Positions 1,770 through 26,198 of a stretch of 64,000 nt of DNA are shown in pieces. The stretch spans positions 1,054,001-1,118,000 of the forward strand of contig JBLDXI010000025.1 in assembly GCA_047495785.1 (NCBI GenBank), written 5' to 3'. Position numbers and translations under genes: made by a program. The notes under the pieces are model-generated. The model did no database searches, was not told the DNA's origin, and saw only the letters and a list, made by a program, of their open reading frames with translations. The stretch is from Lepidodermella squamata. Taxonomy: Eukaryota > Animalia > Gastrotricha. The first letter of the stretch is position 1. Each line of letters starts with the position of its first letter.

Positions 1770-1887
1770 TGATAGCGCGGTTGAAAGAGCATTCGCAAAC
1801 GAGGCTTATAAAGTGGAAACATGATGCAATATGATGCCACCATTTCGATGGCTATTTTACCTGTGATACCTGATGTAGAAATCACAA

Positions 1888-3680: not shown

Positions 3681-3814
3681 TACTCTATGGCTTTCCATGG
3701 AGAAATAAAATTTCCCCCCTCTCTGGAACCCCTCGATTCGTTTGGCTGCGCCAAACTCACTCGGGGTTCCAGATCGGGGGGAAATTTTATTTCTCCATGG
3801 AAAGCCATAGAGTA
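3681..3814. repeat. Near-perfect palindrome (~50-bp arms), TA-bounded MITE-like element
   Basis: TACTCTATGGCTTTCCATGGAGAAATAAAATTTCCCCC... pairs with ...GGGGGAAATTTTATTTCTCCATGGAAAGCCATAGAGTA; a partial related motif lies at ~3933-3955. Confidence 0.85.
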
Positions 3815-6954: not shown

Positions 6955-8630
6955 ATGGTCCGGCTTGACACACACTATACTGCGTTACCTAGGCGGAAAG
7001 CTCAAAACATCATTCTTATCGGAAGTAAGCATATTTCATCAGATAAACTTTTCGCAACCTTTTTCTCGGGCGTTCATAGCTTCCGTGACTTTGGCGGTGT
7101 GGTATTTATGCCGCAAAATCAAGCTTTGGTACAGTTATAGGAAAGTTGGGTCATTACTGCAGTCAATACCGGGCGATGGAACGTTCGACCACTTCCCGTT
7201 CGGTGCCTTAGCTCAGCCGAACTACGAAGGCTTGGCTAAGCGGCAGAAATATGGACCCATCTACCGCATTTACCATTACAGCACCCCGATTATGTGAGTA
7301 TTCAGCAATTATTTTAGAGCTATTATGGAGAAAGTGTGATGACAGAGTTCTAGCTCAGAGTAAACTGGCTGTTGAATGGTACCGAGACAATACGAAAAGC
7401 GTATCCCGCGACCATGGTTTGGCAGTTATGGGCCCAATGCTCAGCCATTTAATGGGCCAAGCAGTCGGGTTCGAAGCTGGAAAAACCTGGCAACGATGTC
7501 GGACCATGTTCAAGCCAGACTTCATGCCGAAAGCAGTCGAAGAAAACTTCATCATTATGCAAGAAGAGGTCGATAAATGGTGTCAAACTTACCTGACAGA
7601 CGGCGCTGTTCTCGACTTTTTCTGGAGTGAACTTTTCAAACTACCGTTCAACGTACTGAAACGGCTCATGTACGGTAAATTGATAGCGGAGAGCGAGACG
7701 GAAGACGTTTACCGCATGGCAATGGAAATGAGTGCACTTAGCGCTGATTCAGCGATCAAACCCATTTGCAACCAACGATTTTATCTGTCGCTGCCGACTG
7801 ACAGAAAGAGACGCTGTTTCAAGCTGAAAAATGACTGGCATGCCTTTAACAAGGAAAAGTATGAAATGCTACGCAGCGGCAAGGTTTCTATCCAGGATGG
7901 CGGATGTTTCGCCCAGGTATTTCATCGACTCTTCCCCGAGGGTTTGCCGCCATTTGAAGAGATCAATCATGACGATCTAGAGATGATTATTCAATCGATG
8001 AATGAGAACCTTCTGTTCAACAATGACGTGACAAATGCAGTTTTGATGACTAACTTGATCACTCTAGCCCATGAGAGGCATGTCCTGGACGAATTGTATG
8101 CCGAATTGAAACAGGCTGCGAGTAATGTTGATTCATCCGGGGTTGTGGATTGTAATTCTTTGCTATCCTTGCCTTATCTTGATGCTGTTATCCGCGAATG
8201 TGGCCGCCACAAGCCGTTTCTAACGATTACAGTCGCTGAGCAGACGCTGGATGATATAACTCTTGGTGGGTATCGTTTATCTGCCGGGACCTTCATCTGC
8301 CTGGATGCTGAAGCGATTAATTTTGATCCTGAAGTATGGCCAGAGCCTGAAAAGTTTGACCCGATGCGTCACATGGGCGAACGCAAGTCTGAACTCGATT
8401 TTCACCGCTTCGGTCTAAATCCTAGGAGGCAATGCCTTGGCTTCCGATATGCTCTGGCTGTGATTAAACTAGTGATTTGGCACATTGTAACGAAATATGA
8501 TATCGAAATTCACGGCAATGATAAGGAAGCTATATATCGCCGATGGAGAACGGAAAAGAAGAAATGGGGCCTGCCCTTCATTACGCCGTACATGTCATTT
8601 CCGAAAATCAAAATCCAAGCTAGAGCCTGA
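6955..8630 (+). CDS. Cytochrome P450, 3 exons (6955-7024, 7080-7293, 7346-8630)
   Basis: GT-AG introns 7025-7079 and 7294-7345 join three ORF-track frames into one. N-terminal anchor NIILIGTSVTLAVWYL, K-helix ECGR, WPEPEKFDPMRH, heme motif FGLNPRRQCLG; AATAAA at ~8676. Confidence 0.9.
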
Positions 8631-8753
8631 TTCTAAAATTGCCATTTCTTAATTAAGTTCCGTTTCTTAAAAGGAAATAAATCAGTAAAAATCTTGATAT
8701 TGCAAAAATGTCCTAATTTTTAGCAGTGAAATGTCAGAGTTCACGGTAGTTTT

Positions 8754-11235
8754 TCACTGGGTTGCCCAGAGATCGCAGCGTTTCCATCCATCTGGGTTCA
8801 TCTTTGAACCAACTGGGCAGCTATAAGTCGCAGCGAATGGCTCGAAATTCTTCATTCCTTCGTTAACTCTGTAAATAAGTAGGTTAAGAACAGATAGATG
8901 ATTCAGTTGAGACAACTCACCGCCATGGAGGGTAGGCATGCTCATCTTTAAGCAGAATACTCTTCCCAAACGGTGTGGTTGCTTGGCAGTAAGATTGCGC
9001 ATTGCTTACGAAATAGATCTGGTCATTATTCAGCGGAACGCCGGGAACTTCGAACTTTTTGAGGCCATCGTCTCCAAAAGCTTTCTTGAAGGCTGCATAG
9101 GCGAACTTGAGACCAGCGTTGTCAGCAGCATTTTCAGCAAGGGTGGCCTCGCCATAGCCAGTTGCATCCGGACGCAAGGCTTGGAACTGGTCGATGAGAC
9201 ACTTCAGCTGCTCCTTGAACTTATCAAGCGCCGCCCCTTCCAAAATTGGCTTAGCCTCACCATAGGCATTGAAATTGATTCCACTGCTATCGAAGCCATG
9301 AATGATTTCTGTTTTAAAATAAATAAATAAATAAGTCATTGAGTATTTGAAAGAATGAATCGTACCATGCCCAATAGTTTGGCTGGGGAATCCCCAATTC
9401 CAAGCACTGGGAAGGTCGAAGCGGAAAGAAGGAGCAACGAAGTAACCAGCGATCAAGCCAAACGTATTGAGGGTTGGTTTGTAGAACGCATTTTGCTCCA
9501 TAACCTTGGCGCCTTGCCAGCTGGACGAAAAAATATATTCTCTCCAAAGATCTTTAACATCTTAAAACACATACAAATGCTCCAGTCGATCAACGGGTCC
9601 ATTAAGCTGTCTCAACGTGCGAGCGTTGTTGAATTCACCAAGAGCTTTCTTATTGTGCACAAAATCTGGTCCCGGGATGGTCAGAGCATCGTACTTCTTA
9701 TCGTAAGCTTCGCTCATGAGATCTGGCGGGAAGCCCATTGAAAATTTGATCTGTTCGACCTTGAGCTTGACGGCAGCCTTCGCCTTAGCGTCTAACCACG
9801 TCACCTTGTCAAAAGCGTCGTGAATTTCGGCCAAAACAAGGCTTGTCATGTTCGACAGGTAGTCGACGTTTTCCTTGGAAAAGAATCGTTTCAAGAAGCG
9901 ACGGGCGATAAAGTGATCGCCGAACTGCTGCTGGATCAAGGCATCGCACGATGGCTGATTTTCTTTAACTTTCCCGCAGAACGCATCATCGGCAATACGT
10001 TCAGACTCATCGATGGACTGCGCGATGACTTGAAGCTGGTACAGAGGTTGAGTTATGTCGCAGGCAATTTGACTGGAAAATGCGTCGATCGCAGTAAAAA
10101 CGGCGTAATTCTGAAATACGCGTTTGCTTCGGTCGGCGCCGAGTTTAGTCTTCGTCTGGGCGATGAGCAGAGATAGCTTCTCGAAGTAGGTCTTGCTGCG
10201 GAACGAAATTCGTAGATCTTTTGAGCCGAGTGATGGAACGTCCGCAATGCCCCCCAACACACGGAAAAATTCTTCCCAGTCGATGTTCGGGCTAACTTTC
10301 TGCAATTCTTCCAAGCGCTCATCAAATCTGTCTTCCTTATTTTCGACAAAGTTGGCATCCTCCACGTCGTTATTAGTCTTATCGCCTAATTCTGCCATAT
10401 TTGGGGAAATCTGCAAATGAACTCTTAGAAGGGTTCAGTTTTGGTTAGTTCGACTTACCAAAGCTAGCTCGACCTCAAACTCAGCTAAATCCTTGATGTA
10501 GGTGTCAGAAACTGTGTAACGGTTCTTCCTGGGTATGATCATCTTGAACAGCTTGGTAATCTCGGTGACGTACATTTCTTTGGCATCGCTCAGGGTTGCG
10601 TTATCTTCGTCGCTATCAATCAAATTTTGCATTGCTGTACGATCACCAAATGCCGGCGTTGTTCTCGGACCGAGGAACAGCTGAAACTCGGAGGCATTCG
10701 ACGGATTTACATCGATGTCAACCGAGAAGAAAGCAGTTTTTCCCTCGATCAGCGTAGCCGGGAGGACTTGCTCCAACCGCGTTTTGACTTCTTCGTCGCT
10801 GATGAACAACCCACCAACATCTCGAGCAAGATTGCGAAGAAAAGCGACAGAGGATTCGACGTCATCGAAGCGATCTGAACCAGACACGCAAGACTGCATG
10901 AAATCCTTGAACTTCTTCTCAGCCGGGGAAAAGCTAGATACATTAGCGCTGTTGAAGTCTAACATTGCCCTCTGAGTCATGTCTCCAAAAATGTCGTCCA
11001 TCGCACCTTGCCAGGCACGGTTGTTTTTAATGATCGCATTAGCAGCATATCCACCACAGGCGAATTGGTAGAAGTCTTCACATGGGTCCGCAGTCAGGTC
11101 TAGATTGCTAAGGATGAATTCAGCTGCCTTGACGCAACCTGGAGTTGTGCAAGATCCAACGCCAACTGATGGATCAATCGGCTTGGCTGAAATATAGCTC
11201 AGCAGAGCAGTAACTGCTAAAGTTGAGAAAATCAT
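8754..11235 (-). CDS. Secreted M13 (neprilysin-like) zinc metallopeptidase, copy 1, multi-exon
   Basis: Signal peptide then KPIDP; CTTPGCV; [14 protein letters not shown]; QNAFY; IGH|EIIHGFD split by an intron; ENAADNAG; HAYPPWR; CPVGSKMNP..RCDLW. Confidence 0.92.
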
Positions 11236-12639
11236 TGTGTTCAGCAATGAAATATTCGCATTCAAAGACGGCTTTTAAAAGCCGGCTTGATAACTAGGAG
11301 AGCAAATGCCGGTGAGGTGTGAAGTAAAATCAGAATACTTTTTCATCCAGCTTTGCTTGAATTACACCCAACGATTAAATAACGTCAAGTCGGGTTCATT
11401 TGCTGCCTGGAATAATTTAGTTGTGGGTGTCGTTTTTGTTTAAAGGTGTTGATTGGAGCTCACACTTCATTCTCCTTCTGAAACCAGCTCCTGATGTGCC
11501 GCCCCAAAACCCGCAATTAAATGCCCCTGAACAATTGATTAATGTAACCTGAAATTTATAAAATATATCAAACTTTACGCGCATTTATCACACTTCTATG
11601 ACTAGCTCCAGAAAACACAGCAATTACAAAAGCTCACGGTGAAAAGATCTGTGACTTTTTTCCAAAGAAATAGAACCAGCTATTTTCCCACAGATTATGT
11701 ATCGAGTGAGCGCTGAGATAATATCACAACACAGCTGGTAAAACGGCGCTCCTGCATTTGAAATTTTCTAATCAGTTGCTTTCCAGATGAATTCATGATG
11801 CAATGGAACTAGATATCGCAATGGCTCGTCAGAAGTTTTATTGATCGATCATTATAACTCTTTCATTTATAATACTGCTATCAACCCTTGTGATATACTT
11901 GTGATTATATCCCTTAAAATCGCTTGAGTGGTCAACTTAAAATTACGCAGCTTCTATACAGAATACAATCAAAATCAATTCAGAGAATAGGTCCATCGTA
12001 ATAATCCGGTTATGATTTCCGTTGTTAACTCATTGACTGCCAAGGCCCCGATGCATCGGTTTCTCCCAGGAGAAACACTAATACCTCCACTAATATTTGA
12101 AATGTGCTGGTTCGCTGTGTAAACAATGGGCGCGCATGCGCGGCGTAACAATGTAAACAGTAAACACACAATGTGCGCTGCAGTCACGTGACGGCGTTCG
12201 CTTTGTAAAAATGAGAAATCGATCAGCGAGAAATAATTCGAATTATCACGCCTTTTATGGCGAGAATGGTGCCATGAACTCAATATAATATTTGGGAGGA
12301 TTCTAATATCGGATTTTTTATTATGGCACTAACTATTCACTGTGATTTAGAAAGAGTTTTCTCCCAGTTTTGTCATGTTCTCATTTTTGAAGACCGCTTC
12401 AAAATAATACTTATATCTGTAGTTGATGTCAAAAAACTCAGCTTTACTTCAACATGAAAACATTTTACTTCGACAATTTCAGAACGAAGAGCGATAGCTG
12501 GTGATTTATTTCGATGCATTATTTCTAAAATGTATTTCTTTGATTTATTTCGAATGCAACACGCAAATAATTTCCACATGCTACAACAAATACAATATAA
12601 ACCATGAAATCAGGCGAAAAATAAAGCAAGACGAGAGTA

Positions 12640-13150
12640 GATGAACTCAGAAAACGACGCCCAAGTCTGTGAAGAGGCGAATCCGGAGACAGCTGTCTAG
12701 GCCTTGCCTTGCCTAGGCCTTGCGAGGTCTCGGCTTGAAACATGAAAAGAGGAAGCGGCGGCGGTGCGGCGATGACGGCCGGTTCAAAAGCTGACCGCAG
12801 TGATGGCAGGATAGAAGGATGGTGGTCGAGAAACACGACGTCGGCCGGCGGTATGGGCAACAACGCCACCAACAGCGAATAGGCCATGCTCAGCAGCGCA
12901 GTTGTTGGGAATGAGCTTTCGAGCGGCGCCAAAAATGACACCGTAGGCGAGGGCGATCACAGCCAAGGTCGTGACGAAACCACCAGGCAATGTAGCAACG
13001 ATTGCGACGAAATCGCCGCTCATTTTTCGGCAGCGACCGTCGATGCTGTTGGCAATTTTATCGCGCCGACGTAGTCGTTGTAGTAATTTTCGTTGTATTG
13101 GTCGATGTCGAGCAGTACTGCAAGTCCGGGCGTAACCGGGCGTAAAAATT
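12640..13150 (-). pseudogene. Frameshifted paralogue of the 16140-16763 membrane-protein cargo gene
   Basis: DFVAIVATLPGGFVTTLAVIAL...AEHGLFAVGGVVA matches DFGNVLMALAAGFGAALSMLAL...AEQGLIAVGAVVA. In other frames, TTKITTTTT matches the Thr tract and IAAPPPLPLFMF matches IVAPPPPTFVF. Confidence 0.65.
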
Positions 13151-13167
13151 CGAAATCAATACTTGAT

Positions 13168-15720
13168 TTATCGCTTGTTGAACACATTCAACTGGTGCCA
13201 TTTGTTGAAGCAGGTGTTCATGTGAAAAGCAGGATGAGAACCGTCCTCTTTCGGCGGGCAAGCCAGGCACCAATGTGAAACCCTGCCGCCGCAGTTCATG
13301 CAAGGGCGCTCTTTTTTACCAGGCATTTTGGTAAGGTCATGAATCTCGGCTTTCGAGCTGCTGCTGGACGAATCGTTGCTTTTTGATGAATCGAAGGACT
13401 CAGAACTCGCCACTGAGCCATCATCTCCTATCATTCCGAGCAGAGCTCTGATGACTGCTTTGCGAAATTCAAGAAGCGACATCCGAGAGGTATTTCCGCT
13501 TTGCAACTTGAAGAATTGATGGGCAGCAATCATGCCGCTCTCAAGAATCCTGAAGAAAATTTTTCGATACCATTTATACGACTTCCTATTTGCATCATAG
13601 TACGCGGCCTGAAAAAATTATAAAAAGATAAAATATTCACGAAGAGCTCAAATATGTTTGCTCACATTTTGATCGTGACAATCCACCCCATTCATTGATT
13701 TATTGTATTGATCGATCATGAGAGGTTTCATGACAGTCTTGATCCTTTTAGCCGGTGGCTCGCTCATACGTGGTGCCGCATCGTCATCGTCGTCGAGTTT
13801 GCGCTTCAGGCCGGTTTCAGACTCAGCATCATCATCCTCTCCATCTTCGCTATCGCCCTCTGAACCCGAAGCTAGAAAGTACTTGGAAATGGCAGAATCG
13901 TTGTCGCCGCTATCATCGCCGTCAAATTCGGCTTCTGAATCTACTTCCACTCCGGTAGAATCTGCCTCAATCTCTTGATATACCGACCTTTGCCCTGTTT
14001 GCGTTTCATTGTGCTCGATAACCCGTTGAATTCGAGCCGGAAGGGCAATCGGAATCATTTCTGGGGCGAACTCAGTCGATAGCATAAGAACTTCGCGATT
14101 GTCCTTCCATTTGAGTACATTGACATCGTCTTGTCTTCGGCAAATTATTTCACCTGTCTTCAAACTAGCTTGAACCACTTCGGGCGGGTTTCCGACACGG
14201 TTTTTTTTCAGAGTTCCGGTTAGGTGAGTTAGATTAGCCAATAGGTATTTAGCGAGTTCGACGGAAGTGTAAAAATTGTCGACAAAAAGCGAGTGTCCTT
14301 TGCCAAGAAGGTATTTGATGAGCGATTTCACGACTGAAAATGTGTGACCTTTGCCAGAAATAATATCATCTTGAACATTATCCGCGCCTGAGTAGACATG
14401 GAAGCGAAGAGGGATGCCAGTAGATGATTCACACAGCATATAGATCTGTAAAATAGCAGATTGAAAACCAAGGTATTCGCACTAGTCTCTAGTCTCACTA
14501 GATCGAGCCTGATCTTCGAAAATTAAAATTTTAGCTTCGAAATTAAATTTTTGGATTCAAAAAGTAAAATCCTAGCTTCGAAATTAAAATGTTGGCTTCG
14601 AAAAGTAAAATCCTAGCTTCGAAATTAAAAGTTTGGATTCGAAAAGCAAAATATTGGCATAAGTTCTAATCCGATAGTATCCGAGATTTTGGTAGTATCA
14701 TTTTCAAGAATATCACTTGATTTGGTATTCGTGCATATACCGATTTTTTGTTATTTTTCTGAGCTTTTATTCTGCTCCAGAATTCCAGAAATAACGGCTA
14801 CTTATTCTATGTTTTTATAGCTAAAATATAAGTCGTAAAATGGCAGCAAAGCTGAACGTAAAGGGCATTGGGAAAGGTTCTCCAGATATTTTCGAATTTT
14901 TTCATTTTTTATTTTCATTGCCTAGCGTTTTGATGAAAAATTAGAAAAACGGTTTTATGATTTCCGTGGGGTTCTGTCTCAGTCAAAACATGGCCATAAA
15001 TTGTCTCAAAAATCCCGCTAAAACTAAAATTGCATTCCGATTTTGATATATATTTCATTTTATAGAACCTTTGGCCTATCTTACCTTTATACCGAATTTC
15101 GCCTTTTTCGCCTTGTTGTACGACTTGAATGCCAGCCTTCCCTTGAAAAGTACTTGAGATTCATCGATTGCCAGATTTTTGCCAGGTGAATAAAGGTCAT
15201 TCATCCGATTTTGATAGAAGTTTAGAACAGGTCTGATTTTATAGAGGCGATCGGTTTTGATGTTTTGCGCCAGAAATTGGTTGTTGTTGAAATGAAGATT
15301 TGACAAAATCGCTTCAAATCGATTTCGAGACATCGTCAAATTGAATATCGGTGTTGCCATCAGTTTGTCCTCCGTCCAGTAACTTGCGATTGTAGGCTTT
15401 CGAATCACTCCCATTAGCAGCCATAAACCGAAAAATCGCTCAAGCTCCGGAACTGTCAATGGCACCCAGTCGTTGATTCTGGCGTTGGGTTTAAGCCCAA
15501 TTTGACGTAATTTTTGATTGGCATATCTATTCGTTTCCTTGCACACCATTTCGAGAAACTCGATGGTGAAAATTAGCCGGAAAAAACTAACTGGGGACAA
15601 TCGACCGCAATCAGGCTGGATTTTAAGTTTTTGGGCTCCGGTGAACGGAAAAGATAGAGGCGGCTCATCGGAATTGATCCATCGCTGGCATCCATGAAAT
15701 TCGAGACATAAATCTGAATT
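13168..15720 (-). CDS. piggyBac transposase (PGBD4-like), spliced; 5' start unresolved
   Basis: Exons ~15720-15085, 14445-13666 and 13608-13168 join in frame (KFGIK|IYMLCES; DQN|AAYY). Motifs MSRNRFEAILSNLHF, AIDES, FVDNFY, GVDCHDQ, KWYRKIFF and a C-terminal Cys-rich CMNC..WCLAC..HMNTCFNKWH. Confidence 0.93.
14513..14655. repeat. Minisatellite (~20-bp unit, ~40-bp higher-order dimer) in the transposase intron
   Basis: About seven alternating units of the types GCTTCGAAATTAAAAnnTTG and GATTC/GCTTCGAAAAGTAAAATCCTA. Confidence 0.8.
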
Positions 15721-16139
15721 CTGAAATTCGAAGTTTGAAAATTCTAAATTGTACGCCTTTCAGTGCTAAATCCCGGGCCGTTAGGAATTCACCGCTTGAC
15801 CGCACGCGGAAGCATATGTAAACAATACTGCGTGGTCGAAAAACAAACAAATCCGGAGGCGAGTTCCTGCAAGATGCCGCACCGCGCTATACGTGAAAAT
15901 TTCAGGATAATTCCCGGATCAAAATTACAAGACACAAGACCGAAAATCCGCCGATTAAATATTTTATTGCATCATTGCAAAGTAAGAAAAGCCGGAAGCG
16001 AAATACAACAATACAATACAAAACGAGTCATCAATCAACAACAATACAAATTCGCAATACTGAGAACTGAGAATACAAAAAACAGCGATAGAAAAATTGT
16101 CAGTAAGATACGAAATGTTCAAAACAGGTAAACAGCAGC

Positions 16140-16763
16140 TCACGCGCGCCTTGGACGGCCGCGGCCGCGACGAGGCGCCACCGGAGCTGGCGCAACAGGT
16201 GGCGCTGCTCGAAACACGAAAGTAGGAGGCGGCGGTGCGACGATTGCCGGAATGGCGGCAGGCTGAATGGTGGCTTCGATTGGAGGCGGTGGCAGAATCG
16301 GAGGAAGATTCGGCAGAATCGGCTCGGCTTGAGACTGAACAGCCGGCGGAGGAGGTCGAGCAGGTACCTGCCGCTGAGCAACAACAGCGCCAACTGCGAT
16401 TAGGCCTTGTTCTGCAGTGCCGTTGCCTGGCTTGTAGGGCACAGGGTATCTGCGGCGAAAGCAACACCACCAGATGAAAAATATAAAAAGAGAACACGTC
16501 AGCGCCAACATCGACAATGCCGCCCCAAAACCGGCCGCCAGCGCCATGAGCACATTGCCGAAGTCGGGAGTAGCCGGGGTCGTTGTAGTCGCACTTGTCG
16601 CAGTTGTCGGCAATGTCGCCGTCGAAGTACCAGGAGCAGACCAAGCGGTTGTTGTTGTCGTCGTCGTTGTTGTTGTGGATAGAGCAAGCAAACCCGGCCG
16701 CGCTGAACGGGTGACGATGCCGTATCCTGGCTGATAATAAATATCGAAGTCAAAAGTCGACAT
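16140..16763 (-). CDS. Single-pass membrane protein: Thr-rich N-terminus, TM-WWCC, Pro-rich tail, C-terminal AT-hook-like motif (piggyBac cargo)
   Basis: 207-aa ATG ORF with poly-Thr tract, hydrophobic segment ending FFIWWCCFRRR, Pro-rich region and terminal PRRGRGRPRRA; AATAAA at ~15963-15968 on the minus strand; a decayed paralogue in the same element supports coding status. Confidence 0.7.
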   Translation of the reverse strand: MSTFDFDIYYQPGYGIVTRSARPGLLALSTTTTTTTTTTAWSAPGTSTATLPTTATSATTTTPATPDFGNVLMALAAGFGAALSMLALTCSLFIFFIWWCCFRRRYPVPYKPGNGTAEQGLIAVGAVVAQRQVPARPPPPAVQSQAEPILPNLPPILPPPPIEATIQPAAIPAIVAPPPPTFVFRAAPPVAPAPVAPRRGRGRPRRA

Positions 16764-17248
16764 TATTCAGAAATTTGTTAGCTCGAATTTGCTTATTTTT
16801 ATTTTCTTTCCTCCTTTTGTAGTCACCTTTCAACCGTTTTACTGTATCATTACGTCGGCGTCACAGCCGACCGCGGTCTCGCTGTCTGCCAAAACAGCCG
16901 AGCGGCTCCAAGGGCAGGTCAACCGGCCGCGACGCCCACCGGCGCCGTTTCAAAGTCTGTAATTACTGACCGCGCACTACAACCGCCCGCCTCGCCACAG
17001 GTGCGCGCGCGCGCGCTTTCTCCACAGGTGCGCGCCCGATGCGCGCCCGGTGCGTAATCACACGCTCGAGTGAGGATCACGTATTTTATGTCAACGGCGT
17101 GGGACTAGAAAGGAATTAAATTGAAATGAAAATATTTGCCAAAGCCATTTCCGGATACCTGATGAGCCGTTCAAGCAATATATAGCCAGCTCCAAAAAGT
17201 CTCCAGTCACCAGATAAATTTTTCAAACAGAATTTCCGTTATTCTGTA

Positions 17249-18199
17249 ATGAAAGGCTTTTTTCATGTATTTTTTGCGGCGGCGCTTATTATGCCTGCGT
17301 GCTGCTTGGAAATAACTGAAATATCGCCAACTCAGGTCATTTCAGGTCGATACTATTATGACCAGCTGAAAGCTCAGAACAATTCTTGTGTCGATAGATG
17401 GCTTGAACACGCGAAAAAGTTGTGCGCAAACTCAGTGATGTCGTGGCAAAATGTCGCCGAGTCAGCTCTCAAATGCTATCTGTCGGCCAAAAACTCTACA
17501 AAAGCTATAAATTGTCCTATGACACAGCCTACAGAATTCGCCAGCCAAATTAATTGCTTGAAAAATTCTCTCGAAGTTTTAGACTGGCTCACTTACATGA
17601 TTTTCGTTGGCGAAATTCGCGAAATATGTAGCTATTTTTTATTTTTCAAGGAAGAAAATTCTCCTCTCTACATACTCGCTAGACACTTTTTTCAGGCAGT
17701 AGTTGATTGCTTTCCAATTGAAGGCCCCGTGATTGATTTTTTCTCATATTTCAAAGAGTCGACGCTTTTCGTCGCTGTTACTTCTCAAGTCTTTTACAAC
17801 GCTTCGCTTGAACAGTCTTTCTTGAGGTATCGAGTCTCATTCTACATATTTCACAATGTTTTTCTGACATTATTTCGACGAAAAAAATTCCTAATATCTT
17901 TGAATCTTGTTGCCTTCGCCGAGTTCGCTCTCCAAATTTTTCTCAAATCAAAAAGTGGGTTTGAATGGCGATATTTTCTTGGAGAGTATCTATTGACCAT
18001 TTTGCTTCGCTGGCTATTCATAATCCATTTCTTGATTTTTGGAGAAATATGGTCGCCTGTTCATAATTTATGGAAAAGGCTTAGCCATTGCTGGGACTAC
18101 AGTTCAACTTATCTCTGCAAACTAGGACGCGATCTAACCCCGCGAAAAACTGATGTTGCATCTGTCAAAACAAGGTCGAAAAAGAAATCCGAGGATTGA
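17249..18199 (+). CDS. GEX1/Kar5/Brambleberry-like Cys-rich-domain membrane protein (piggyBac cargo)
   Basis: Intronless 316-aa ORF: signal peptide, then GRYYYDQLK..SCVDRWLE..KLC...ALKCYL...NC...NCLKNSLEVLDWLTYMIFVGEIREICSYF (six-Cys spacing and TY..F.....IC tail of the Kar5/GEX1 CRD), several C-terminal hydrophobic helices and a basic tail. Confidence 0.62.
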   Translation: MKGFFHVFFAAALIMPACCLEITEISPTQVISGRYYYDQLKAQNNSCVDRWLEHAKKLCANSVMSWQNVAESALKCYLSAKNSTKAINCPMTQPTEFASQINCLKNSLEVLDWLTYMIFVGEIREICSYFLFFKEENSPLYILARHFFQAVVDCFPIEGPVIDFFSYFKESTLFVAVTSQVFYNASLEQSFLRYRVSFYIFHNVFLTLFRRKKFLISLNLVAFAEFALQIFLKSKSGFEWRYFLGEYLLTILLRWLFIIHFLIFGEIWSPVHNLWKRLSHCWDYSSTYLCKLGRDLTPRKTDVASVKTRSKKKSED

Positions 18200-18560
18200 T
18201 CTGAACCTTTTCGATTTTTTCTATGCCGGAAGGAAATTTTTTAATTTGTTGCGCTACTTTGGGAATTTCGACATAAAATTTGTGAAAAATTTGCAAATTG
18301 GGATAACTTGAAAATAATTGACCCTTCAGTATTTTACGGTAGCGGGAAACAATTTCCTTTCGGCAGCAGCTTTTTTCTTCAACTCGTCCGTCTCATTCAT
18401 TCGCGACGATGTTTTTTACATTTTGATTATTGGCTTTGCCTGAATTTCGTTCACTTCATTTATTCATTGAAATTTGAGTACCTCAATAATTGCTGATTGT
18501 ATCTTTTAGCTCCAGTAAAACAATGTTTGATGCTTTACTATTTTGTTTTTTATTTTAGAG

Positions 18561-19331
18561 ATGCAAGTATTTACAAATTTAGTTTCTACTGTGGTCGAGA
18601 GGCATCGCCTAGCTGTTCAGGAGACAAACCGAGAATTCTATGGAACCAGCCGATTGGAAGAGAGCGGTTCAACGGCAGAAGTAAGTCGCTTGAAAAATTC
18701 AATCCGGCAGCATTTTCGTATTTTTCCCCATTTGTAGAGCGATTCTCGACCTGGCGTGTATGACTTCGACAGTGAGTCGGAATCGATCTCCGCCTCGAGC
18801 TCTTCAACGCCATTGCAACAAAGCACCACGTCGGCGTTAGCGCCGCCAACAGCTGTATCCGCAATTCTACCGCTGAAAGACGCAGCGTCTAAAATTACGC
18901 CACTTCGACCGGTTCATCGGCTTCTTTTTGGGCGCAACGCGCGTCAATCGGAAGCAAATGAAAATCACCCCCACGGTCAATGGATCGCAAGAAGTTTCGC
19001 CGACCTGCCTGATGAAAATGAAACAAATAACATGATATTGTTAGGTTCGCATGTGCTGGAGCAAGAAATCATAAAATTGGCATATGAAATTCATAAAGAT
19101 AAACCTTTTTTGTTTGCGAAAAGAATTTTGAAAGAATGTGAAAGTCGTTCCCGGCAATTTGGAAAGGCATCAGTTTGGAATGATGCGGATTTGATTGACG
19201 ATGTAACAAAACTTGTAATGCAAAAATACGATCATTTTTTTCTAATTCGACGTGCTATTTGCCAAAATTTCGCTGAGTGTAATCGTAAAAAAAAAGCATA
19301 CGAGTCGAAGAAAAAATCGACAAAAAAATAG
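18561..19331 (+). CDS. BEN-domain-like putative DNA-binding protein (piggyBac cargo), exons 18561-18680 and 18738-19331
   Basis: A phase-0 GTAAGT...TTGTAG intron joins two ORFs. Ser-rich linker, then helical C-terminus FLFAKRILKE...DADLIDDVTKLV...IRRAICQNFAECNRKKK resembling BEN domains; Lys-rich NLS-like end. Confidence 0.55.
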
Positions 19332-20189
19332 CAATTTGTGCTTTGTGCGTGGTGATCAGTTTTTTGTTCTTGTTGCTTGAAATAAATGTTTTCGTTCAAA
19401 TGACTTTTGATAACTCCTGAATTATTTTCACCTGAATTTTTAGTACTTAGCAGTTTGCGCAAATAATAACGTTTCGAAAACAGGCTTCAAGCTTGATTTA
19501 CGCATTCAACAGCGAGGGCGAAGACCGTCTTTGTTTACCGACCGCACTTGAGAGTCACCCAAGGCGCGTCCGATTTGTTTGCATAACAGCTAACAGCGGC
19601 GATAAACGCGCGTGTTTTGTTTATTTTAAACCTTGAACAAACATAACGCAAAACGCGAAATCGCTATTCCAGCATCTCGCTAGGTGAAAGTTGGGTTTCT
19701 CCGGGGAGAAAAACTCACGTGAGAAAAAAATCTCCGGGAGAAAACTCTGGCAGTGAAAGAGAATAGCCTTCATCAACCATCTCCAAGTTCGGGAACCTTT
19801 TTTTGCAACCGGAATTATTTTTAATTATTAATTATTGTATTTATTTCCGTTTTAATTTTAAGCACCTTTTTAATTTTAAAAAATACGGTTTTCGTCTAAA
19901 AAAATGGAAAAAAATAGCCAAACCTCCGCCCACGGAATCTGAGTGGACAGGTGAAGTTTGGAAAATTAATAAGCTCACCTTGATTTTAAACAAATAGGTA
20001 AAGAAACCTCTAAATTTGGACACTCGTTCCCAAATTTGGACACCTCATTTGCATATGCTATTCGACCTTACACACATTTTATTCCTTGTTGCGCAATTTT
20101 TCTCGTGTTTTTAAAGGCGACTTTTGTAGCCACTTGACACTAAAATATTGCTACTGATAGGATTCACTCATCGTCAGATTTAATGCAGA

Positions 20190-20979
20190 TGTACGCAATT
20201 AAGAGATAGCTAATTTATTAAAAATCTTTGAGCAAAATTGTACAGAGTTGGGTCTGAAAATTAACGTTGCCAAAACCAAGTATATGGTGGTTAAAAACGA
20301 AGAAACGGACAAACCGCCCGAAAATCCTGACGATTCCCAGTTAAAAATAAACGGGGAGAGTCTAGAAAGAATAAATACCTTCAAATATCTAGGAAGCATA
20401 ATTAGCTCTGACGGTACTTGCACTCTGGAAATAGAAGAGAAAATGCAAAAGGCCGAGTCTTGTTTCGGGGCATTAAACAAATTCATAAATAATAAATCGC
20501 AAGTCAGTATCCCTGCAAAAATGAAGGTTAAGCGAGCTGTAATGACTCCGACACTCCTCTACGCTTCTGAAAGTTGGAATGCAACCGCGGCTCACCAATT
20601 GAGGCTGGATGTTGTGCAGATGAGGTGGCTTAGGGCTATAGCCAACGTCACTATTATGGATAAAATCAGAAATGATGACATAAGTAAAATCTGCGAAGGT
20701 ATAGAACCTATCTCAGCTCAAATAGAACATAACCGACTACGTTTCTTAGGGCACATTCTTAGAATGAATGACGATAACCTAGTCAAGCAAATATACTTAT
20801 GGACGCCACTAAAGGGCTGGCATAGGAAGTTAGGCAGGCCCAGAGTAGGATGGGATTATTGTAACACTCAAAGCTTATTGCAAGCAAAAAATCTTGAAAA
20901 TTACAAAAAATTTGTAAGCGTCTACAATGAAAAATGTCTAAATTGGGACAAAATTGGCATCTTTTTAAATTCTTTGTAG
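20190..20979 (+). mobile_element. RTE-clade LINE reverse-transcriptase fragment
   Basis: GLKINVAKTKYM, FKYLGSIISSDG, PTLLYASESW, RLRFLGHILRM and GWHRKLGRPRVGW are RTE-type ORF C-terminal motifs; the 5' part is missing. Confidence 0.88.
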
Positions 20980-21166
20980 TTTGAAGCTGTCCGAAATTAG
21001 CCGGGACAAAATGGGTTTTCTAAAGCATTTCCTGATCAAAATTTTCGTTTAAAAACGTTTTAAAGACGCTAATAGTAAACAAAATACGCGATTTATAAAA
21101 TTTCTGAGTTTTGTGACATATTTCGGTTGAAAACCGGTCAATCGGCAGCGGCTGACCGGCCGCGAA

Positions 21167-21322
21167 CATGAGACGTGCCAGGACGCCGAGGCTTCGAATC
21201 TCCTATAATAAAATCTGTGTAAAGCGAAACGGATTATTCATGAGCTCGTCGCATTGATTTGAGGCACGAGCTGATGTTTTTTGCCCCCTTTATCAAGCCT
21301 CGGCGTCCTGGTACGTCTCATG
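21167..21322. mobile_element. 156-bp MITE-like element with 28-bp terminal inverted repeats
   Basis: CATGAGACGTGCCAGGACGCCGAGGCTT (21167-21194) versus AAGCCTCGGCGTCCTGGTACGTCTCATG (21295-21322), one mismatch. Confidence 0.75.
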
Positions 21323-23510
21323 GTCTCACGATTAGTACCAGACCGGTGACCTGACCCAACAGGTGACTGGTGACCGGCGGGTCGACTTGACCCGTTGCCG
21401 CTGAGTCAGGTAATACGCAGGTAAAGAAGGCGGTAAAACATCTTCACCACCAAAGCGCCGCTAGCGATATCCGTTGCTCTTGGTACCGTAAAAATGAGCG
21501 AATTCAGCCAGTGGGATGATATTGACAAGTTTTTGCATGTTGCGCCAAGTTGCGCGCCGTGTGAAAACTTTCGAAAAACTTTCGAAAAACTTCAACGAAA
21601 TCGACAACAATCGGCAAAATTGACCAAAGCTGTTTACACAGCCCGGTGTCCTGAGGTAGCGAGTCACGTCAACAGCGCAATACAGAGGGCTAGGGCGGCG
21701 AAGAGGGGCGGAACTCTTGAGACGCGGATTAGGGATTAGCGGATTAACACCGCTTTTGAGAGCGAGCGCCTTGCAGACCTGCAATAAGGGCAATAAAAAT
21801 GTGACAACTGCGCACGGAGAGGGTTCATTCGAACGCGGTTTTTCAAGAAATTGACTGCTACATGTTGTAATGGGTCGGCGGGGGAATAGCGTCCAGCGTT
21901 TGGAAAGAGCTGAGTAACACGGGTCGTAAAATGGCTCGGCTCAGTCTCAGTGGTTATCGAACCACCCCGATTAGGTGCTAGGAGCTAGCAATGGGCGGTT
22001 GTTTCGGTGTTACTATAGCCACCCTCGTGCGCAGTCCGGTATAAACTCATTTCGAGTCCCATAGGTACGCAGCCGCCGAACACCCAGTTCATGCGCACCG
22101 ATAGCGAACATCCCTTTTACGGCATATCTGGCCGACATTGCGCGAAAAAGTTAGCCCATTATAGAGCTTTAATACCAGTCGCTAGGTGCTAGCGGTTTGC
22201 TATCAGCCGCGTTTAGCTAACGTGACGAAGTGGTTCTGTGGTCAGTGGATGATTTTTGCAAAAAAAACCAGCCGCCAAGTTATTCTGATTAATGGATTTA
22301 ATTCCGCGGATTCATCGCTACTTTCCGCGTCTATTTTTAAATTTTTCCGCGGCGCGAATAGTGGTTTCCGCGTCAAAAGTCTTAACACCGCACCTTTGCA
22401 CACTATTAAGCAGAAAGGTAAACAATCGCGCGCACTCGCGCATTATTCCGCAGCGCACCACCGCGGCGATTTTAAGAATTCCGCGGGCGCAACACACAGA
22501 GCCTTAAAAGTGTCCAAATTTAGAGGCTAAATTCAAAGTCACCTGTATCAAAATTGGCTTGTCCTTCTGCCGAGATTTTTTTTTACAGAATTTAGTTTAG
22601 GTAAATCCCTATGCGTAAAAAATTCAGCCCTAACCGTTCACAGGTGAGCATTTGGCAGGGGGGGGGGTCTCAAAACACCTTTCTGAGTGATCGAGCTTCG
22701 GCGATTTTTCGCAAATCGATAGTACATGAAAGTATTGGCAAATTTGGTACCGTTGAAAAGCCCATGAAGGGAGCTATTTTTCAGTGAAATTTTTTGAATT
22801 ATTATCAGCTATGCACAATTGATATTTGGGTCTAAAGCTCAAAGTGTCCAAATTTAGGGCGCGTTACGGTACAGCTTGAATTACACTTCTCATCCATGTT
22901 TCGTTATTATCGTGAAGCCATGACTACAGAACGCCGCAAAGATATCGCGATTTCACAATGAGGCGCAATTGATTTTGTTGAAGAGATTTTCCGATTTTTA
23001 TTAATACTATTATTATTAATTTTACCGTAATTGAATCATGGGTGGCTATTGCTCGTCCATCTCGATTAAAAGCCCAGTTCTCACCCTTTTTTAAACATTG
23101 ATAATCTAGAAGCCTGGGCTAGTATTTCAACATTTAAGGTAAACAGTAGGCCGTACGGTAGACGATTTCAACACTCAGCTTGCCGAGACGAATTTATCGC
23201 TATCAAACCTAGGGTATTAGCGTGATTAGATGATGTGACCGAGTAGATTAGGGCACCTGGTTCACTAATTCCGGCCAGGAGTCTATGCATTCGATAGCAT
23301 TCGATAGCCCGAGAACTCCTCTATAATTCTGTATATTTGCTGAATATTTTCAAAAGAATTCACCTGGCTGGCAAAGTAGGAAAAACCGAAAGAGTGGCCG
23401 AATTCAGGGCGGGGTGCACTACACAAACCGCCTGTTTCGTGTTATGCGGTTGACGCGAAAAACTCGAATTCAGCTGCCAAATAGACTTGAGTCTATCGTC
23501 TTCGCATATC

Positions 23511-23573
23511 GGCCTACCATTTATTACGCCTGACACGTCATTTCCCAAAAATCAAAATCGAAGCTTGAGCCTT
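23511..23573 (+). pseudogene. Remnant of the 3' end of the P450 gene
   Basis: GGCCTACCATTTATTACGCCTGACACGTCATTTCCCAAAAATCAAAATCGAAGC encodes GLPFITPDTSFPK(+1)IKIEA, matching the P450 end GLPFITPYMSFPKIKIQA (8568-8630); homology continues into the 3' flank. Confidence 0.8.
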
Positions 23574-23722
23574 ATTCTAAAATTCCATTAATTTCCATTA
23601 ATAAGCTCTTATTCCTAAATATTCTTAAAAGGAAATGAATCAGCAAAGTCTCAAACACTGCAATAATGTCCTGATTTGATAGTAGTGGAATTTCTCAGTT
23701 GGTAGCATTTTATGGAAATGTT

Positions 23723-26198
23723 TCACTGGGCTGCCCAGAGATCGCAGCGTTTCCATCCTTCTGGGTTCATCTTTGAACCAACTGGGCAGCTGTAAGCCGC
23801 AGCGAACGGCTCGAAATTCTTCATGCCTTCAGTGACTCTGTAAGCAGGTAGGTTATTAATTGATCAGAGTTTCAGTAGGGAAACTCACCGCCAAGGAGGG
23901 TAGGCATGCTCATCCTTCATCAGTATAACCTTCCCTGATTCAGTAGATGCTTGACAGTAATATTGTGCATTGCTCACGAAAAAGATCTGGTCGTTGTTCA
24001 GCGGAACGCCTGGAACTTCAAACCTTTTGAGTCCATCATCGCCAATAGCCTTCTTGAAGGCTGCATAGGCGAACTTCAGGCCGGCGTTGTCAGCAGCATT
24101 TTCATCCAGAGTGGCCTCTCCGTACTTGGGCGATTCCGGACGCAGTGCTTGGAATTGATCTATGAGGCACTTCAGCTGTTCCTTGAACTTAGCACGCGCC
24201 GCCCCTTCCAAAATTGGCTTCACCTCACCGTGGGCATTGAAGTTGATTCCGTCGCCATCGAAGCCATGGATGATTTCTGTTTTAAATAAATTCAAGCTAA
24301 TGAATATTTGAAAGAATGAATCGAACCATGTCCAATAGTTTGGCCTGGGAATCCCCAATTCCAAGCACTAGGAAGGTCGAATCGGAAAGCAGGTGCAACG
24401 AAGGCACCAGCGAGTAGGCCGAATGTATTTAGGGTCCGCTTGTATTTCGCATTTTGAAGCACAACCTGATCTCCTTGCCAGCTGAAAGAAAAGTGAACTT
24501 TTATCAGAGCTTTTTAACATAAAAATATAATTACAATTCATCGAGCCGATCAACGGGGCCATTAAGTCGTCTCAAAGTGCGAAGGTTCAGGAAGTCACTG
24601 AGAGCCTTGAGATTGTGCACAAAATCTGGTCCCGGGACTGTAAGAGCATCGTACTTCTTATCGTAAGCCTGGCTCATCAAATTTGGCGGGAAGCCTATCG
24701 AAAATTTAATTTGCTCGATCTTTAGCTTGACGGCGGCCTTTGACTTGTCGTCCAACCACGTCACCTTATCTAAACCGTCGCGAATTTCTGCCAAAACTAG
24801 ATTAGTCATGTTCGATAGGTAGTCGACGTTTTCTTTCGAGAAGTATCGTTTCAAGAAGCGACGGGCGATGAAGTGATCGCCGAGTTGCTGCTGGATCAAA
24901 TTATCGCACGATGGTTCGGAAGTTTTAAGTTTCTTGCAGTACGCTTCATCATCAAGACGTTCAGAATCAACGGTGGACCGCGCGACGGCCTGAAGCTGGT
25001 ACAGCGGTTCAGATATATCGCAGGCAATTTCATCGTTGAATGATTGGATTGCTGTTAGAACAGCATAGTTTTGAAACACACGTTTGCTTCGGTCGGCGCC
25101 GAGTTTAGTCTTCGTCTGGGCGATGAGCAGAGATAGCTTCTCGAAGTAGGTCTTGCTGCGGAACGAAATTCGTAGATCTTTCGAGCCGAGGGATGGGACG
25201 TCCGCCATGCCTCCCAACGCACGAAAGAATTCTTCCCAGTCGATTTCCGGGCTAACTTTCTGCAATTCTTCCAAGCGCTCATCAAATCTGTCCTCGTTAT
25301 TTTCGATAAAGTTAGCATTTTCCACGTCGTTGTTACTCTTAACACCTGATTGTGCCATATTGGGTGATATCTGCAGAATAAGCATTTAGAATGAGTCTTT
25401 CAAGGTAGATCTACTTACCAAGGCTAGCTCTAACTCAAACTCAACCAAATCCTTGAAGTAGGTGTCAGAAACTGAGTAACGGTCCTTTCTAGGTATGATC
25501 ATCTTGAACAGCTTAGTAATCTCGGTGACGTACATTTCTTTGACATCGCTGATTGTTTCGTTATCTTCGTCACTATCAATCAAAGCTCGAGCTTTGGTTT
25601 GATCACCGAAAAATGGCGTCGTTCTCGGGCCGAGGAATATCTGATACTCGGAAGCATTCGACGGATTTACATCGATGTCAACAGAGAAGAAAGCAGTTTT
25701 TTGGAGGATAAGTGTCGCCGGAAGGACTTGTTCTAACCGCGCTTTGACTTCATCCTCGCTAACGTACAGCCCACCGACATCTCGAGCAAGATTGCGAAGA
25801 AACGCGACAGAAGATTCGAAGTCATCGAAGCGATTCAAAGCGTCAGTCTTGCAAGACTGCAATAGCTGAACGAACTTTTTCTCAGCCGAGGTTAAGCTTG
25901 ATGCATTTTCGCTGTTGAAGTCCAATAAAGCCTTCTTAGCCATATCATCGAAAGTGTCATCCATCGCTGTCTGATAAATACGGCCGCTTTTAACGACCGC
26001 ATTATCAGCATATCCACCACAGGCGAACTGATAGAAGTCTTCACATGGGTCCGCAGTCAGGTCCATATTACTTAGAATGAAATCAGCTGCCTTGACGCAT
26101 CCCGCAGTTGTGCAAGATCCAACGCCAACAGATGGATCAATCGGCTTGGCTGAAATACAGCTCAGTAAAGCAGTAACAGCTAGTGTTGAGAAAATCAT
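23723..26198 (-). CDS. Secreted M13 peptidase, copy 2 (recent duplicate of copy 1)
   Basis: Same exon layout and long identical stretches versus copy 1; IGH|EIIHGFD; ENAADNAG; RCDLWAAQ*. Confidence 0.92.

What the first reader, a model, noticed from the sequence alone, without database searches (positions are those of the whole stretch)
12025..19765. Cargo-carrying piggyBac: one ~7.7-kb element packs a spliced transposase with membrane, nuclear-fusion-like and BEN-like genes
Seen: piggyBac-type termini with shared subterminal palindromes enclose a transposase retaining its DDD triad and Cys-rich domain, plus three unrelated open genes and one decayed paralogue. The genes are densely packed around a divergent spacer. 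Established: typical piggyBacs are about 2.5 kb and encode only the transposase; large gene-carrying derivatives such as Teratorn are rare. Inference: this may be an undescribed multi-gene mobile element whose accessory proteins act at membranes, the nuclear envelope and chromatin. Caveat: the right end is followed by AATA, not TTAA.
Basis: partly seen in the sequence, partly recalled or inferred. Interest (0 to 1): 0.9.

Follow-up and report, generated by a model that had tools for sequence, protein, structure and literature searches.

The report
Large piggyBac-like transposon with extra genes
A 7.7-kb piggyBac-type transposon copy lies between two duplicated peptidase genes and holds three extra open genes of unknown function besides its intron-split transposase, but only this one copy could be found, so it is not shown that the extra genes travel with it.

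Summary
The transposase is real. Three open pieces on the minus strand (13171-15747) match Pfam DDE_Tnp_1_7 and the piggyBat structure. They are colinear with an intronless relative across two exact GT-AG introns and keep the DDD residues and the Cys/His finger. Its first ~70-115 residues and start codon were not found.

The proposed ends (12029 and 19761) are probably a true pair. The 13/17 inverted repeat is near chance by itself. However, an exact 16-nt palindrome occurs only at these two places in 64 kb, mirrored heptamers and CACGTG flank both ends, and TTAA abuts the left end. The right flank is AATA.

Paralogue comparison shows that 11881-23510 is all inserted DNA, so the enclosed genes are not old syntenic host genes.

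The 207-aa membrane ORF, the 316-aa signal-plus-two-helix ORF and the two-exon 237-aa gene are open and read best in their own frames. None has a Pfam, PDB or database homologue, so the "nuclear-fusion-like" and "BEN-like" labels are unsupported.

No second copy exists in any searchable collection; the closest transposases are 38-48% identical. Catalogued piggyBac-like elements reach 8.45 kb and Pokey 9.8 kb.

Verdict: a plausible gene-carrying piggyBac variant, with cargo status and mobility unproven.

The parts
12025..12028 (.). TTAA directly outside the left arm (candidate target-site copy)
   Evidence: Read directly from the sequence. TTAA is expected at a given 4-mer in about 0.7% of cases at this base composition.
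12029..12045 (+). Left terminal inverted-repeat arm, 17 nt. This is the 3' side of the element relative to the transposase.
   Evidence: It matches the right arm at 13/17. Its first six bases, CTCATT, fit the PBLE TIR motif reported in PMC5381638.
12046..12400 (+). Left subterminal region. It holds the 16-nt palindrome at 12060-12075, a further half-site at 12353-12366 and CACGTG at 12185.
   Evidence: Only 0.75% of control segments share as many 8-mers with it as the right subterminal region does.
12525..13023 (-). Decayed paralogue of the 207-aa membrane gene. It has one frameshift relative to the open copy and lacks the Thr-rich N-terminal part.
   Evidence: blastn gives 78-80% identity over short stretches. 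tblastn matches fall in two frames. A hydrophobic helix is kept.
13171..15747 (-). piggyBac-type transposase gene. Coding pieces are 15085-15747, 13666-14445 and 13171-13608; introns are 14446-15084 (639 nt) and 13609-13665 (57 nt). There are no stops or frameshifts within the pieces. The start codon and N-terminal part were not found.
   Evidence: Pfam DDE_Tnp_1_7. piggyBat 9c0f residues 72-271, 273-388 and 400-426. Colinear with P0009 at residues 116-313, 314-437 and 482-606. Splice sites.
16140..16763 (-). Open 207-aa ORF. It has a Thr-rich stretch, one hydrophobic helix and a Pro-rich tail ending in an RGRP-type basic motif.
   Evidence: Pfam gives only weak compositional hits, E of 0.024 or worse. 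The stop codon lies inside a GTGAGC donor-like hexamer.
16764..17248 (.). 485-nt spacer between two divergently oriented ORFs. GC is 50% and CpG observed/expected is 1.47.
17249..18199 (+). Open 316-aa ORF. It has a signal-like N-terminus, 11 Cys, 3 N-x-S/T sites, two hydrophobic helices (residues 214-232 and 247-265) and a basic tail.
   Evidence: No Pfam, PDB or database homologue. AlphaFold2 pLDDT is 43.8.
18561..19331 (+). Two-exon gene model of 237 aa. Exon 1 is 18561-18680, the 57-nt GTAAGT...TAG intron is 18681-18737 and exon 2 is 18738-19331. The protein has an acidic/Ser-rich middle, a helical C-terminal ~100 aa and a Lys-rich end.
   Evidence: No Pfam BEN hit, no PDB hit and no homologue.
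19332..19744 (+). Right subterminal region. It holds the palindrome at 19696-19711, a second shorter copy at 19731-19745, GGGAGAA twice and CACGTG at 19716.
19745..19761 (-). Right terminal inverted-repeat arm, 17 nt. This is the 5' side relative to the transposase.
   Evidence: It is the best inverted match to the left arm anywhere in 15600-23500.
19762..19765 (.). AATA flank where TTAA would be expected
   Evidence: Read directly from the sequence. Unexplained.
11881..23510 (.). Context: the 11.6-kb block of inserted DNA between two recently duplicated M13-peptidase units (8566-11880 and 23511-26880). The element is 7.7 kb of this block. The block also holds a 5'-truncated LINE reverse-transcriptase fragment at 20248-20979(+).

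Best explanation
Positions 12029-19761 are one copy of an unusually large piggyBac-like DNA transposon.

Shown:
- It encodes a piggyBac-superfamily transposase with the catalytic aspartates and the C-terminal Cys/His finger, split by two spliceosomal introns.
- It is bounded by imperfect 17-nt inverted arms with palindromic subterminal repeats at unequal spacing.
- It lies in DNA that entered the spacer between two duplicated peptidase genes.

Inferred by analogy with Trichoplusia ni piggyBac (PMC5861402):
- The Cys/His finger of the transposase recognises the palindromic subterminal repeats.
- The catalytic core cuts at the arm/TTAA junction, so everything between the arms would move as one unit.

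Most of the extra DNA (4 kb, three open genes) sits between the transposase and its 5' end. This is the region that varies most in length in piggyBac-like elements. The rest (about 1.1 kb, with the decayed paralogue) sits on the 3' side.

The extra genes are most simply passengers or element-borne accessory genes of unknown function: two membrane or secreted proteins and one helical, basic-tailed protein.

This particular copy looks aged or altered. Its arms are imperfect, it has no TTAA on the right, one internal paralogue has decayed, and no recognisable transposase start was found.
For: - Transposase identity, colinearity and intron boundaries.
- The ends are related. The exact 14-specified-base palindrome occurs at both ends only; about 3e-4 such matches are expected in 64 kb (my calculation from base composition).
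- The combined arm-plus-palindrome signature is found twice, against 0 in 100 shuffles.
- Four of the seven TTCTCCC/GGGAGAA heptamers in the window lie within 340 nt of the ends, in mirrored orientation. Two of the four CACGTG sites lie there too.
- The shared 8-mer count is exceeded in only 0.75% of controls.
- TTAA abuts the left arm.
- The first six bases of both arms fit the PBLE TIR motif, and palindromic subterminal repeats define the SG4 structural group (PMC5381638).
- No alternative TTAA...TTAA pair encloses a compact element.
- The enclosed ORFs are long and open. Each scores best in its own frame out of six, with codon usage unlike the host genes and like the transposase and LINE.
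- The two-exon gene has a 57-nt canonical intron, the same size as the transposase's second intron.
- Paralogue alignment places the whole region inside post-duplication inserted DNA.
Against: - There is only one copy, so neither mobility nor co-transfer of the extra genes is demonstrated.
- The arm match of 13/17 is barely above the 12/17 reached by unrelated TTAA sites.
- The right flank is AATA.
- The element is only 7.7 kb of an 11.6-kb heterogeneous insert, so neighbouring insertions have occurred here.
- The transposase start was not found.
- A relative 43-45% identical (P0009) sits in a compact 2,734-bp TTAA-flanked element without extra genes.
Confidence: 0.55

Rival explanations
1. 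This is an ordinary transposase-only piggyBac-like element that later received unrelated DNA, such as nested insertions of other mobile elements or filler DNA from repair. On this view the extra ORFs are an accident of this one copy and not heritable cargo of a family.
For: - The surrounding 11.6-kb block is a patchwork that includes a truncated LINE.
- The closest sampled relative is compact.
- Two of the three extra genes are antisense to the transposase and have their own divergent spacer.
- The duplicated and decayed membrane gene shows internal rearrangement.
Against: - No target-site duplications, inverted repeats or LTRs were seen around the extra block.
- The extra ORFs have no homologue among 5.8 billion protein clusters, which is unusual for proteins of proliferating mobile elements.
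- Their codon usage resembles that of the transposase.
Confidence: 0.22
2. There is no single element. On this view the transposase is a solitary fossil or host-recruited (PGBD-like) gene with host-type introns. The neighbouring ORFs are lineage-specific genes or pieces of other elements. The right-hand arm and repeats belong to a separate fragment or are regulatory repeats.
For: - Host-size introns and a ~90-residue acidic insert lie in the transposase.
- There is no TTAA on the right, and the arm match is near chance.
- The transposase start is missing.
Against: - The exact palindrome, the mirrored heptamers and CACGTG are shared only by the two proposed ends.
- Similarity stops at the arms.
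- The region is absent from the paralogous spacer, so it is not an old host locus.
- Recruited piggyBac genes usually lack element ends (general knowledge; PMC5381638).
Confidence: 0.15
3. This is a Teratorn-like composite, meaning a piggyBac transposase fused to remnants of a DNA virus whose envelope-type and DNA-binding genes survive.
For: Only the general look of the gene set: two membrane or secreted proteins plus a helical basic protein next to a piggyBac transposase.
Against: - No viral domain appears in any ORF (Pfam).
- No homologue exists in the protein collection.
- The size is 7.7 kb against 41-182 kb for Teratorn (PMC6431247).
- There is no polymerase, capsid or packaging gene.
Confidence: 0.03

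Closest known systems
Canonical piggyBac-like elements (PBLE; T. ni piggyBac, piggyBat), especially structural group SG4 of Bouallegue et al. 2017 (PMC5381638)
   Same: - DDE_Tnp_1_7 transposase with DDD residues and a C-terminal Cys/His finger.
- Short arms starting with C-[C/A/T]-[C/A/T].
- Palindromic subterminal repeats at unequal spacing on the two ends, as in the 3-bp versus 31-bp spacers of piggyBac (PMC5861402).
- TTAA at the left flank.
   Different: - 7.7 kb against a mean of 2.8 kb, although the catalogued maximum is 8,451 bp.
- The transposase is split by two introns.
- Three further open genes and a decayed paralogue lie inside.
- The right flank is not TTAA.
- The closest transposases are only 38-48% identical.
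Pokey of Daphnia (piggyBac superfamily; PMC3849761)
   Same: - A large element of 5-9.8 kb.
- The transposase has a short spliced intron.
- The extra DNA sits in the 5' non-coding region upstream of the transposase.
   Different: Pokey's extra DNA is non-coding rDNA spacer repeats, not protein genes. Pokey is multi-copy with MITE derivatives, whereas only one copy is seen here.
Teratorn of medaka and other teleosts (PMC5601938, PMC6431247)
   Same: A piggyBac-type transposase and arms enclose many additional genes.
   Different: Teratorn is 41-182 kb and its cargo is a recognisable herpesvirus genome. Here the cargo is three orphan genes with no viral signature.
PIF/Harbinger two-gene transposons and gene-capturing DNA transposons (Pack-MULEs, Helitrons; PMC6431247, PMC11162782)
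   Same: These are DNA transposons that carry a second protein gene or captured genes between their ends. A helical, basic accessory protein could work like Harbinger's DNA-binding partner; this is analogy only.
   Different: They belong to different transposase superfamilies. Pack-MULEs and Helitrons mostly carry gene fragments. No homology was found between the 237-aa protein and any DNA-binding domain.

Membership tests
piggyBac superfamily element (PBLE) | Transposase with the DDE_Tnp_1_7 (PF13843) catalytic domain | tested here: met
   Pfam E 2.7e-46 and 3.9e-26. piggyBat 9c0f E 6e-35.
piggyBac superfamily element (PBLE) | Catalytic DDD residues (D268, D346 and D447 of T. ni piggyBac; PMC5381638) | tested here: met
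   Asp is kept in the aligned DE, DN-Y-S and VD-x-DQ motifs against piggyBat and P0009. Which residues are catalytic is taken from the literature.
piggyBac superfamily element (PBLE) | C-terminal Cys-rich cross-brace zinc finger | tested here: met
   It aligns to the finger of P0009 through its last His, E 1e-10. By my reading of that alignment, one Cys position is His. The Pfam finger model did not reach E 0.1 on this piece alone.
piggyBac superfamily element (PBLE) | Terminal inverted repeats of about 12-19 bp starting C[C/A/T][C/A/T][T/G/A][T/A/G][T/G/A] | tested here: met
   The 17-nt arms match at 13/17 and begin CTCATT and CTCTTT. The arm match alone is near chance; support comes from the subterminal repeats.
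piggyBac superfamily element (PBLE) | TTAA target-site duplication on both flanks | tested here: not met
   TTAA on the left, AATA on the right. The same search recovers TTAA on both sides of the relative in L021.
piggyBac superfamily element (PBLE) | Several copies at different loci, or empty sites | not testable with these tools
   There is no other copy in the window. No protein at 50% identity or more exists among 1.84 billion representatives. The end signature gave only chance hits in metagenomes. The source assembly is not available.
Cargo-mobilising element (cargo genes faithfully transposed with the element) | The same intact protein genes between the same ends in independent copies | not testable with these tools
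   Single copy. No cargo homologues were found.
BEN domain protein (Pfam BEN) | Significant match to the BEN profile or a BEN structure | tested here: not met
   No Pfam hit up to E 10. No BEN chain in the PDB search at E 10. The AlphaFold2 model has pLDDT 44.8 and shows only a four-helix C-terminal part.
KAR5/GEX1/Brambleberry nuclear-fusion family (Pfam Tht1) | Significant match to the family profile | tested here: not met
   No Pfam hit up to E 10, no PDB hit and no homologue. Only the general topology is similar: a signal-like N-terminus, Cys residues and two C-terminal helices.
Teratorn-like piggyBac-virus fusion | Recognisable viral core genes (polymerase, capsid, terminase) between piggyBac ends | tested here: not met
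   Pfam scans of the main ORFs between the arms found none.
Domesticated piggyBac-derived gene (PGBD-type) | Loss of element ends and orthologous conservation across species | tested here: inconclusive
   End-like repeats are present, which speaks against domestication. Orthology cannot be tested without related genomes.

The most novel reading that the evidence does not exclude
This would be a piggyBac lineage that stably carries its own accessory genes without any viral partner. These would be a helical, basic-tailed protein that helps end recognition or nuclear entry, as the second protein of Harbinger elements does, and two membrane or secreted glycoproteins. All would be expressed from an internal divergent promoter and spliced like host genes. 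It would be the first multi-gene, non-viral piggyBac family.
Probability: 0.15. Interest if true: 0.7.

Novelty: new variant of a known kind. Interest (0 to 1): 0.45.

Why it matters
Cut-and-paste DNA transposons of eukaryotes almost always carry only their transposase. In the papers I read, the only natural piggyBac described as moving whole extra genes is Teratorn, and its cargo is a herpesvirus. A compact piggyBac with several intact, intron-bearing orphan genes would show that this superfamily can pick up and perhaps spread cellular-type genes. It would also offer three uncharacterised proteins whose link to transposition could be studied by expression and distribution data. As it stands, the case rests on one aged copy, so its value is as a lead for a whole-genome survey in the source lineage.

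Tried and rejected
1. Exact look-ups of window ORFs (316 aa, 263 aa, P450) in public assemblies found nothing on record.

2. Word-indexed homologue searches of the 316-aa and 191-aa ORFs returned nothing. A third search, on the host P450 to identify the organism, was wasted because I set the threshold at 1e-20 and nothing passed. The organism stays unidentified and the 207-aa ORF was never searched.

3. The full HMMER scan with transposase piece 1 gave 13,543 relatives, none above 48% identity. The top score, from an Anopheles protein, comes from an internal duplication in that gene model.

4. The metagenome scan with an arm-plus-palindrome signature gave 20 hits, all without further similarity, so they are chance matches.

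5. Single-sequence AlphaFold2 models of both cargo proteins had pLDDT 44-45. I did not run fold search on them because the matches would be meaningless.

6. I searched for a compact TTAA...TTAA element around the transposase, for inverted ends of the whole 11.6-kb insert, and for a direct repeat between the two flanks. None was found.

7. I looked for the 5' exon of the transposase. The only strong donor-like site in 15700-17300(-) overlaps the stop of the 207-aa ORF and is in phase 2. I did not build or test any junction from it.

8. Rfam and tRNA scans found nothing inside the region.

9. The spliced models were searched exon by exon by reference.
Full report
**Context**

The window is eukaryotic and I do not take it for human.
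- It holds at least eleven tandem M13 (neprilysin-type) peptidase genes on the minus strand, with introns of a few tens of bases.
- It also holds a P450 gene, an ankyrin gene, and a GH9 gene with three CBM1 modules.
- CpG is not depleted.
- The organism could not be identified. No window protein is on record, and my one host-gene search was set too strictly.

**Where the finding sits**

The two most similar M13 units are 8566-11880 and 23511-26880. The unit even includes the last ~65 nt of the P450 gene.
- Their upstream spacers align up to about 11880, and their downstream flanks align from about 23511.
- Most other spacers in the array are about 1 kb or less.
- Everything from 11881 to 23510 (11.6 kb) is therefore DNA that entered after the duplication.
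- The proposed element (12025-19765) is 7.7 kb of that block.
- The rest contains a 5'-truncated LINE reverse-transcriptase fragment (20248-20979) and unassigned sequence.

This excludes the reading that the enclosed ORFs are old, syntenic host genes. It also shows that this spacer has been hit more than once.

**The transposase**

Three open pieces on the minus strand carry it: 15085-15747, 13666-14445 and 13171-13608.
- The first two match Pfam DDE_Tnp_1_7 positions 1-158 and 160-279.
- They match the solved piggyBat transposase at residues 72-271, 273-388 and 400-426.
- Against P0009, an intronless 612-residue relative from an environmental assembly, piece 1 ends at residue 313 and piece 2 begins at residue 314. 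Piece 3 aligns to residues 482-606, including the terminal Cys/His finger.
- The gaps between pieces start with GT and end with AG. They are 639 and 57 nt long.

The 'spliced transposase' is therefore well supported by colinearity, though not by RNA evidence.
- The aspartates in the three conserved motifs are kept.
- A low-complexity acidic insert of about 90 residues lies between the second and third aspartate.
- There are no stops or frameshifts within the pieces.
- The missing part is the beginning. Homology starts at residue 72 of piggyBat and residue 116 of P0009. The frame is open for only about 22 codons upstream and holds no ATG.
- I found no 5' exon.

I searched the model exon by exon by reference and made no joined sequence.

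**The ends**

TTAA at 12025-12028 is followed by a 17-nt arm. Its best inverted match in 15600-23500 is 19745-19761, at 13/17.
- That match alone is weak. Six other TTAA sites left of the gene reach 11-12/17 somewhere in the same range.
- The decisive evidence is subterminal. A 16-nt palindrome with 14 specified bases occurs exactly at 12060 and 19696 and nowhere else in 64 kb.
- A signature of arm plus palindrome is found twice, against none in 100 shuffles.
- Four of the seven TTCTCCC/GGGAGAA heptamers in the window lie within 340 nt of the two ends in mirrored orientation, as do two of the four CACGTG sites.
- The two subterminal regions share more 8-mers than 99.25% of control segments.
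- Similarity does not extend outside the arms.

This layout parallels published piggyBac architecture.
- Both arms begin with the C-[C/A/T]-[C/A/T] motif reported for 157 piggyBac-like elements. Palindromic subterminal repeats define one of their four structural groups (PMC5381638).
- The palindrome spacing is unequal. On the transposase's 5' side it is 1 nt from the arm, with a second copy further in. On the 3' side it is 14 nt from the arm.
- This recalls the 3-bp and 31-bp spacers of T. ni piggyBac, whose palindromic repeats are bound by the Cys-rich domain (PMC5861402).

I therefore accept 12029 and 19761 as a related pair of ends.

- No TTAA...TTAA pair encloses a smaller element.
- The same search finds a clean 13/14 pair with TTAA on both sides around P0009 in L021.

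**The enclosed genes**

*Gene (a): 16140-16763(-), 207 aa.*
- It has a Thr-rich stretch, one hydrophobic helix and a Pro-rich tail ending in an RGRP-type basic motif.
- Pfam gives only compositional near-misses.
- A diverged copy lies at 12525-13023(-), between the transposase and the left end. It has one frameshift relative to the open copy and lacks the Thr-rich part.

*Gene (b): 17249-18199(+), 316 aa.*
- It is divergent from gene (a) across a 485-nt spacer with 50% GC.
- It has a signal-like N-terminus, 11 Cys, three N-x-S/T sites, two hydrophobic helices near the C-terminus and a basic tail.

*Gene (c): 18561-19331(+), 237 aa.*
- The 191-aa ORF has no ATG of its own.
- An upstream 40-codon exon with an ATG joins it across a 57-nt GTAAGT...TAG intron in the same frame.

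*All three genes.*
- Each scores best in its own frame out of six. Codon usage is unlike the host genes and like the transposase and the LINE.
- Genes (b) and (c) have no Pfam hit up to E 10, no PDB hit and no homologue in 5.8 billion clusters within the length limits.
- Gene (a) has no significant Pfam hit and was not searched against the PDB or the protein collection.
- Single-sequence models of (b) and (c) are unreliable, with pLDDT 44-45, so I ran no fold search.
- 'Nuclear-fusion-like' rests on topology alone. 'BEN-like' rests on a helical C-terminal ~100 residues. Neither label is supported.

**Relatives**

- The full scan of 1.84 billion representatives with piece 1 gave 13,543 hits, none above 48% identity.
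- Named hits among the top ones looked up are PGBD4-like proteins of fishes and a mosquito.
- P0009, which is 43-45% identical, sits in a compact 2,734-bp element without extra genes. It shows no similarity to any of the cargo ORFs.
- The end signature found only chance matches in metagenomes.

**Interpretation**

The best reading (0.55) is one large piggyBac-like element carrying extra genes.
- The extra genes lie mostly in the 5' region between the end and the transposase. This is the part most variable in length in the family (PMC5381638) and the place where Pokey holds its captured repeats (PMC3849761).
- This copy looks aged: the arms are imperfect, the right TTAA is missing, one paralogue has decayed and the transposase start is missing.

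The rivals are:
- an ordinary element that received later insertions (0.22);
- no single element at all, with a solitary or recruited transposase among orphan genes (0.15);
- a virus-derived composite (0.03).

**Comparison and novelty**

- Size alone is not new. Catalogued elements reach 8,451 bp and Pokey reaches 9.8 kb.
- A spliced transposase is not new either (Pokey).
- Whole, open, intron-bearing extra protein genes inside piggyBac ends would be unusual. Outside Teratorn I found no description of this in the papers searched.
- I rate it a new variant of a known kind, with interest 0.45. The rating is held down by the single copy and the unsupported functional labels.

- I did not scan the viral contig collection with the cargo proteins, because a hit could fetch a virus of animals. 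This step is referred.
- One search printed tblastn bounds in two frames for the decayed paralogue, which brackets its frameshift. In my working I also placed that frameshift roughly by motif. I did not use this further and do not repeat it here.

Noticed in passing
window 8566-59800: There is a tandem array of at least eleven M13 (neprilysin-type) peptidase genes on the minus strand, spaced at about 3.3 kb. The youngest pair (8566-11880 and 23511-26880) is 80-93% identical, and its duplication unit includes the last ~65 nt of the neighbouring P450 gene.
   Followed up: partly
window 62654-63991 (+): An ORF running off the window combines three CBM1 (fungal-type cellulose-binding) modules with the start of a GH9 cellulase domain. 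This is an unusual combination next to animal-type genes and could reflect gene transfer or hint at the source lineage.
   Followed up: no
window 16141-16146 (-): The stop codon of the 207-aa membrane ORF lies inside a GTGAGC hexamer, the same hexamer as the donor of the transposase's 57-nt intron. It is the only strong donor-like site in 15700-17300 on that strand. It could mean that this ORF and the transposase share a transcript. No in-frame junction was established.
   Followed up: partly
window 14514-14652: A 57-nt tandem duplication (88% identical) lies inside the 639-nt transposase intron. That intron is about ten times longer than the other short introns seen here.
   Followed up: no
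window 20248-20979 (+): This is the C-terminal part of a non-LTR retrotransposon reverse-transcriptase ORF, truncated at its 5' end, about 480 nt right of the element. It is weakly similar to the LINE ORF2 in L021.
   Followed up: partly
window 19762-20200: About 440 nt of AT-rich sequence lie between the right arm and the LINE fragment. They belong to neither and replace the expected TTAA flank. Their origin is unexplained.
   Followed up: partly
window 30655-30952: A 39-nt tandem repeat array (6 or more units at 92-97% identity) lies inside overlapping ORFs on both strands (30554-31168), in a 2.7-kb gap of the M13 array.
   Followed up: no
window 3681-3814: A 52-nt inverted repeat, 96% complementary, with a 30-nt loop. 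It is a hairpin or MITE-like structure.
   Followed up: no
window 1698-1969: Divergent tRNA-His(GTG) and tRNA-Ser(GCT) genes lie 120 nt apart.
   Followed up: no
L021 9526-12259: A compact 2,734-bp piggyBac-like element carries a 13/14 inverted repeat, TTAA on both flanks and the intronless 612-aa transposase P0009. It lies next to a full-length LINE in an environmental assembly (ENA ERZ25072448).
   Followed up: partly
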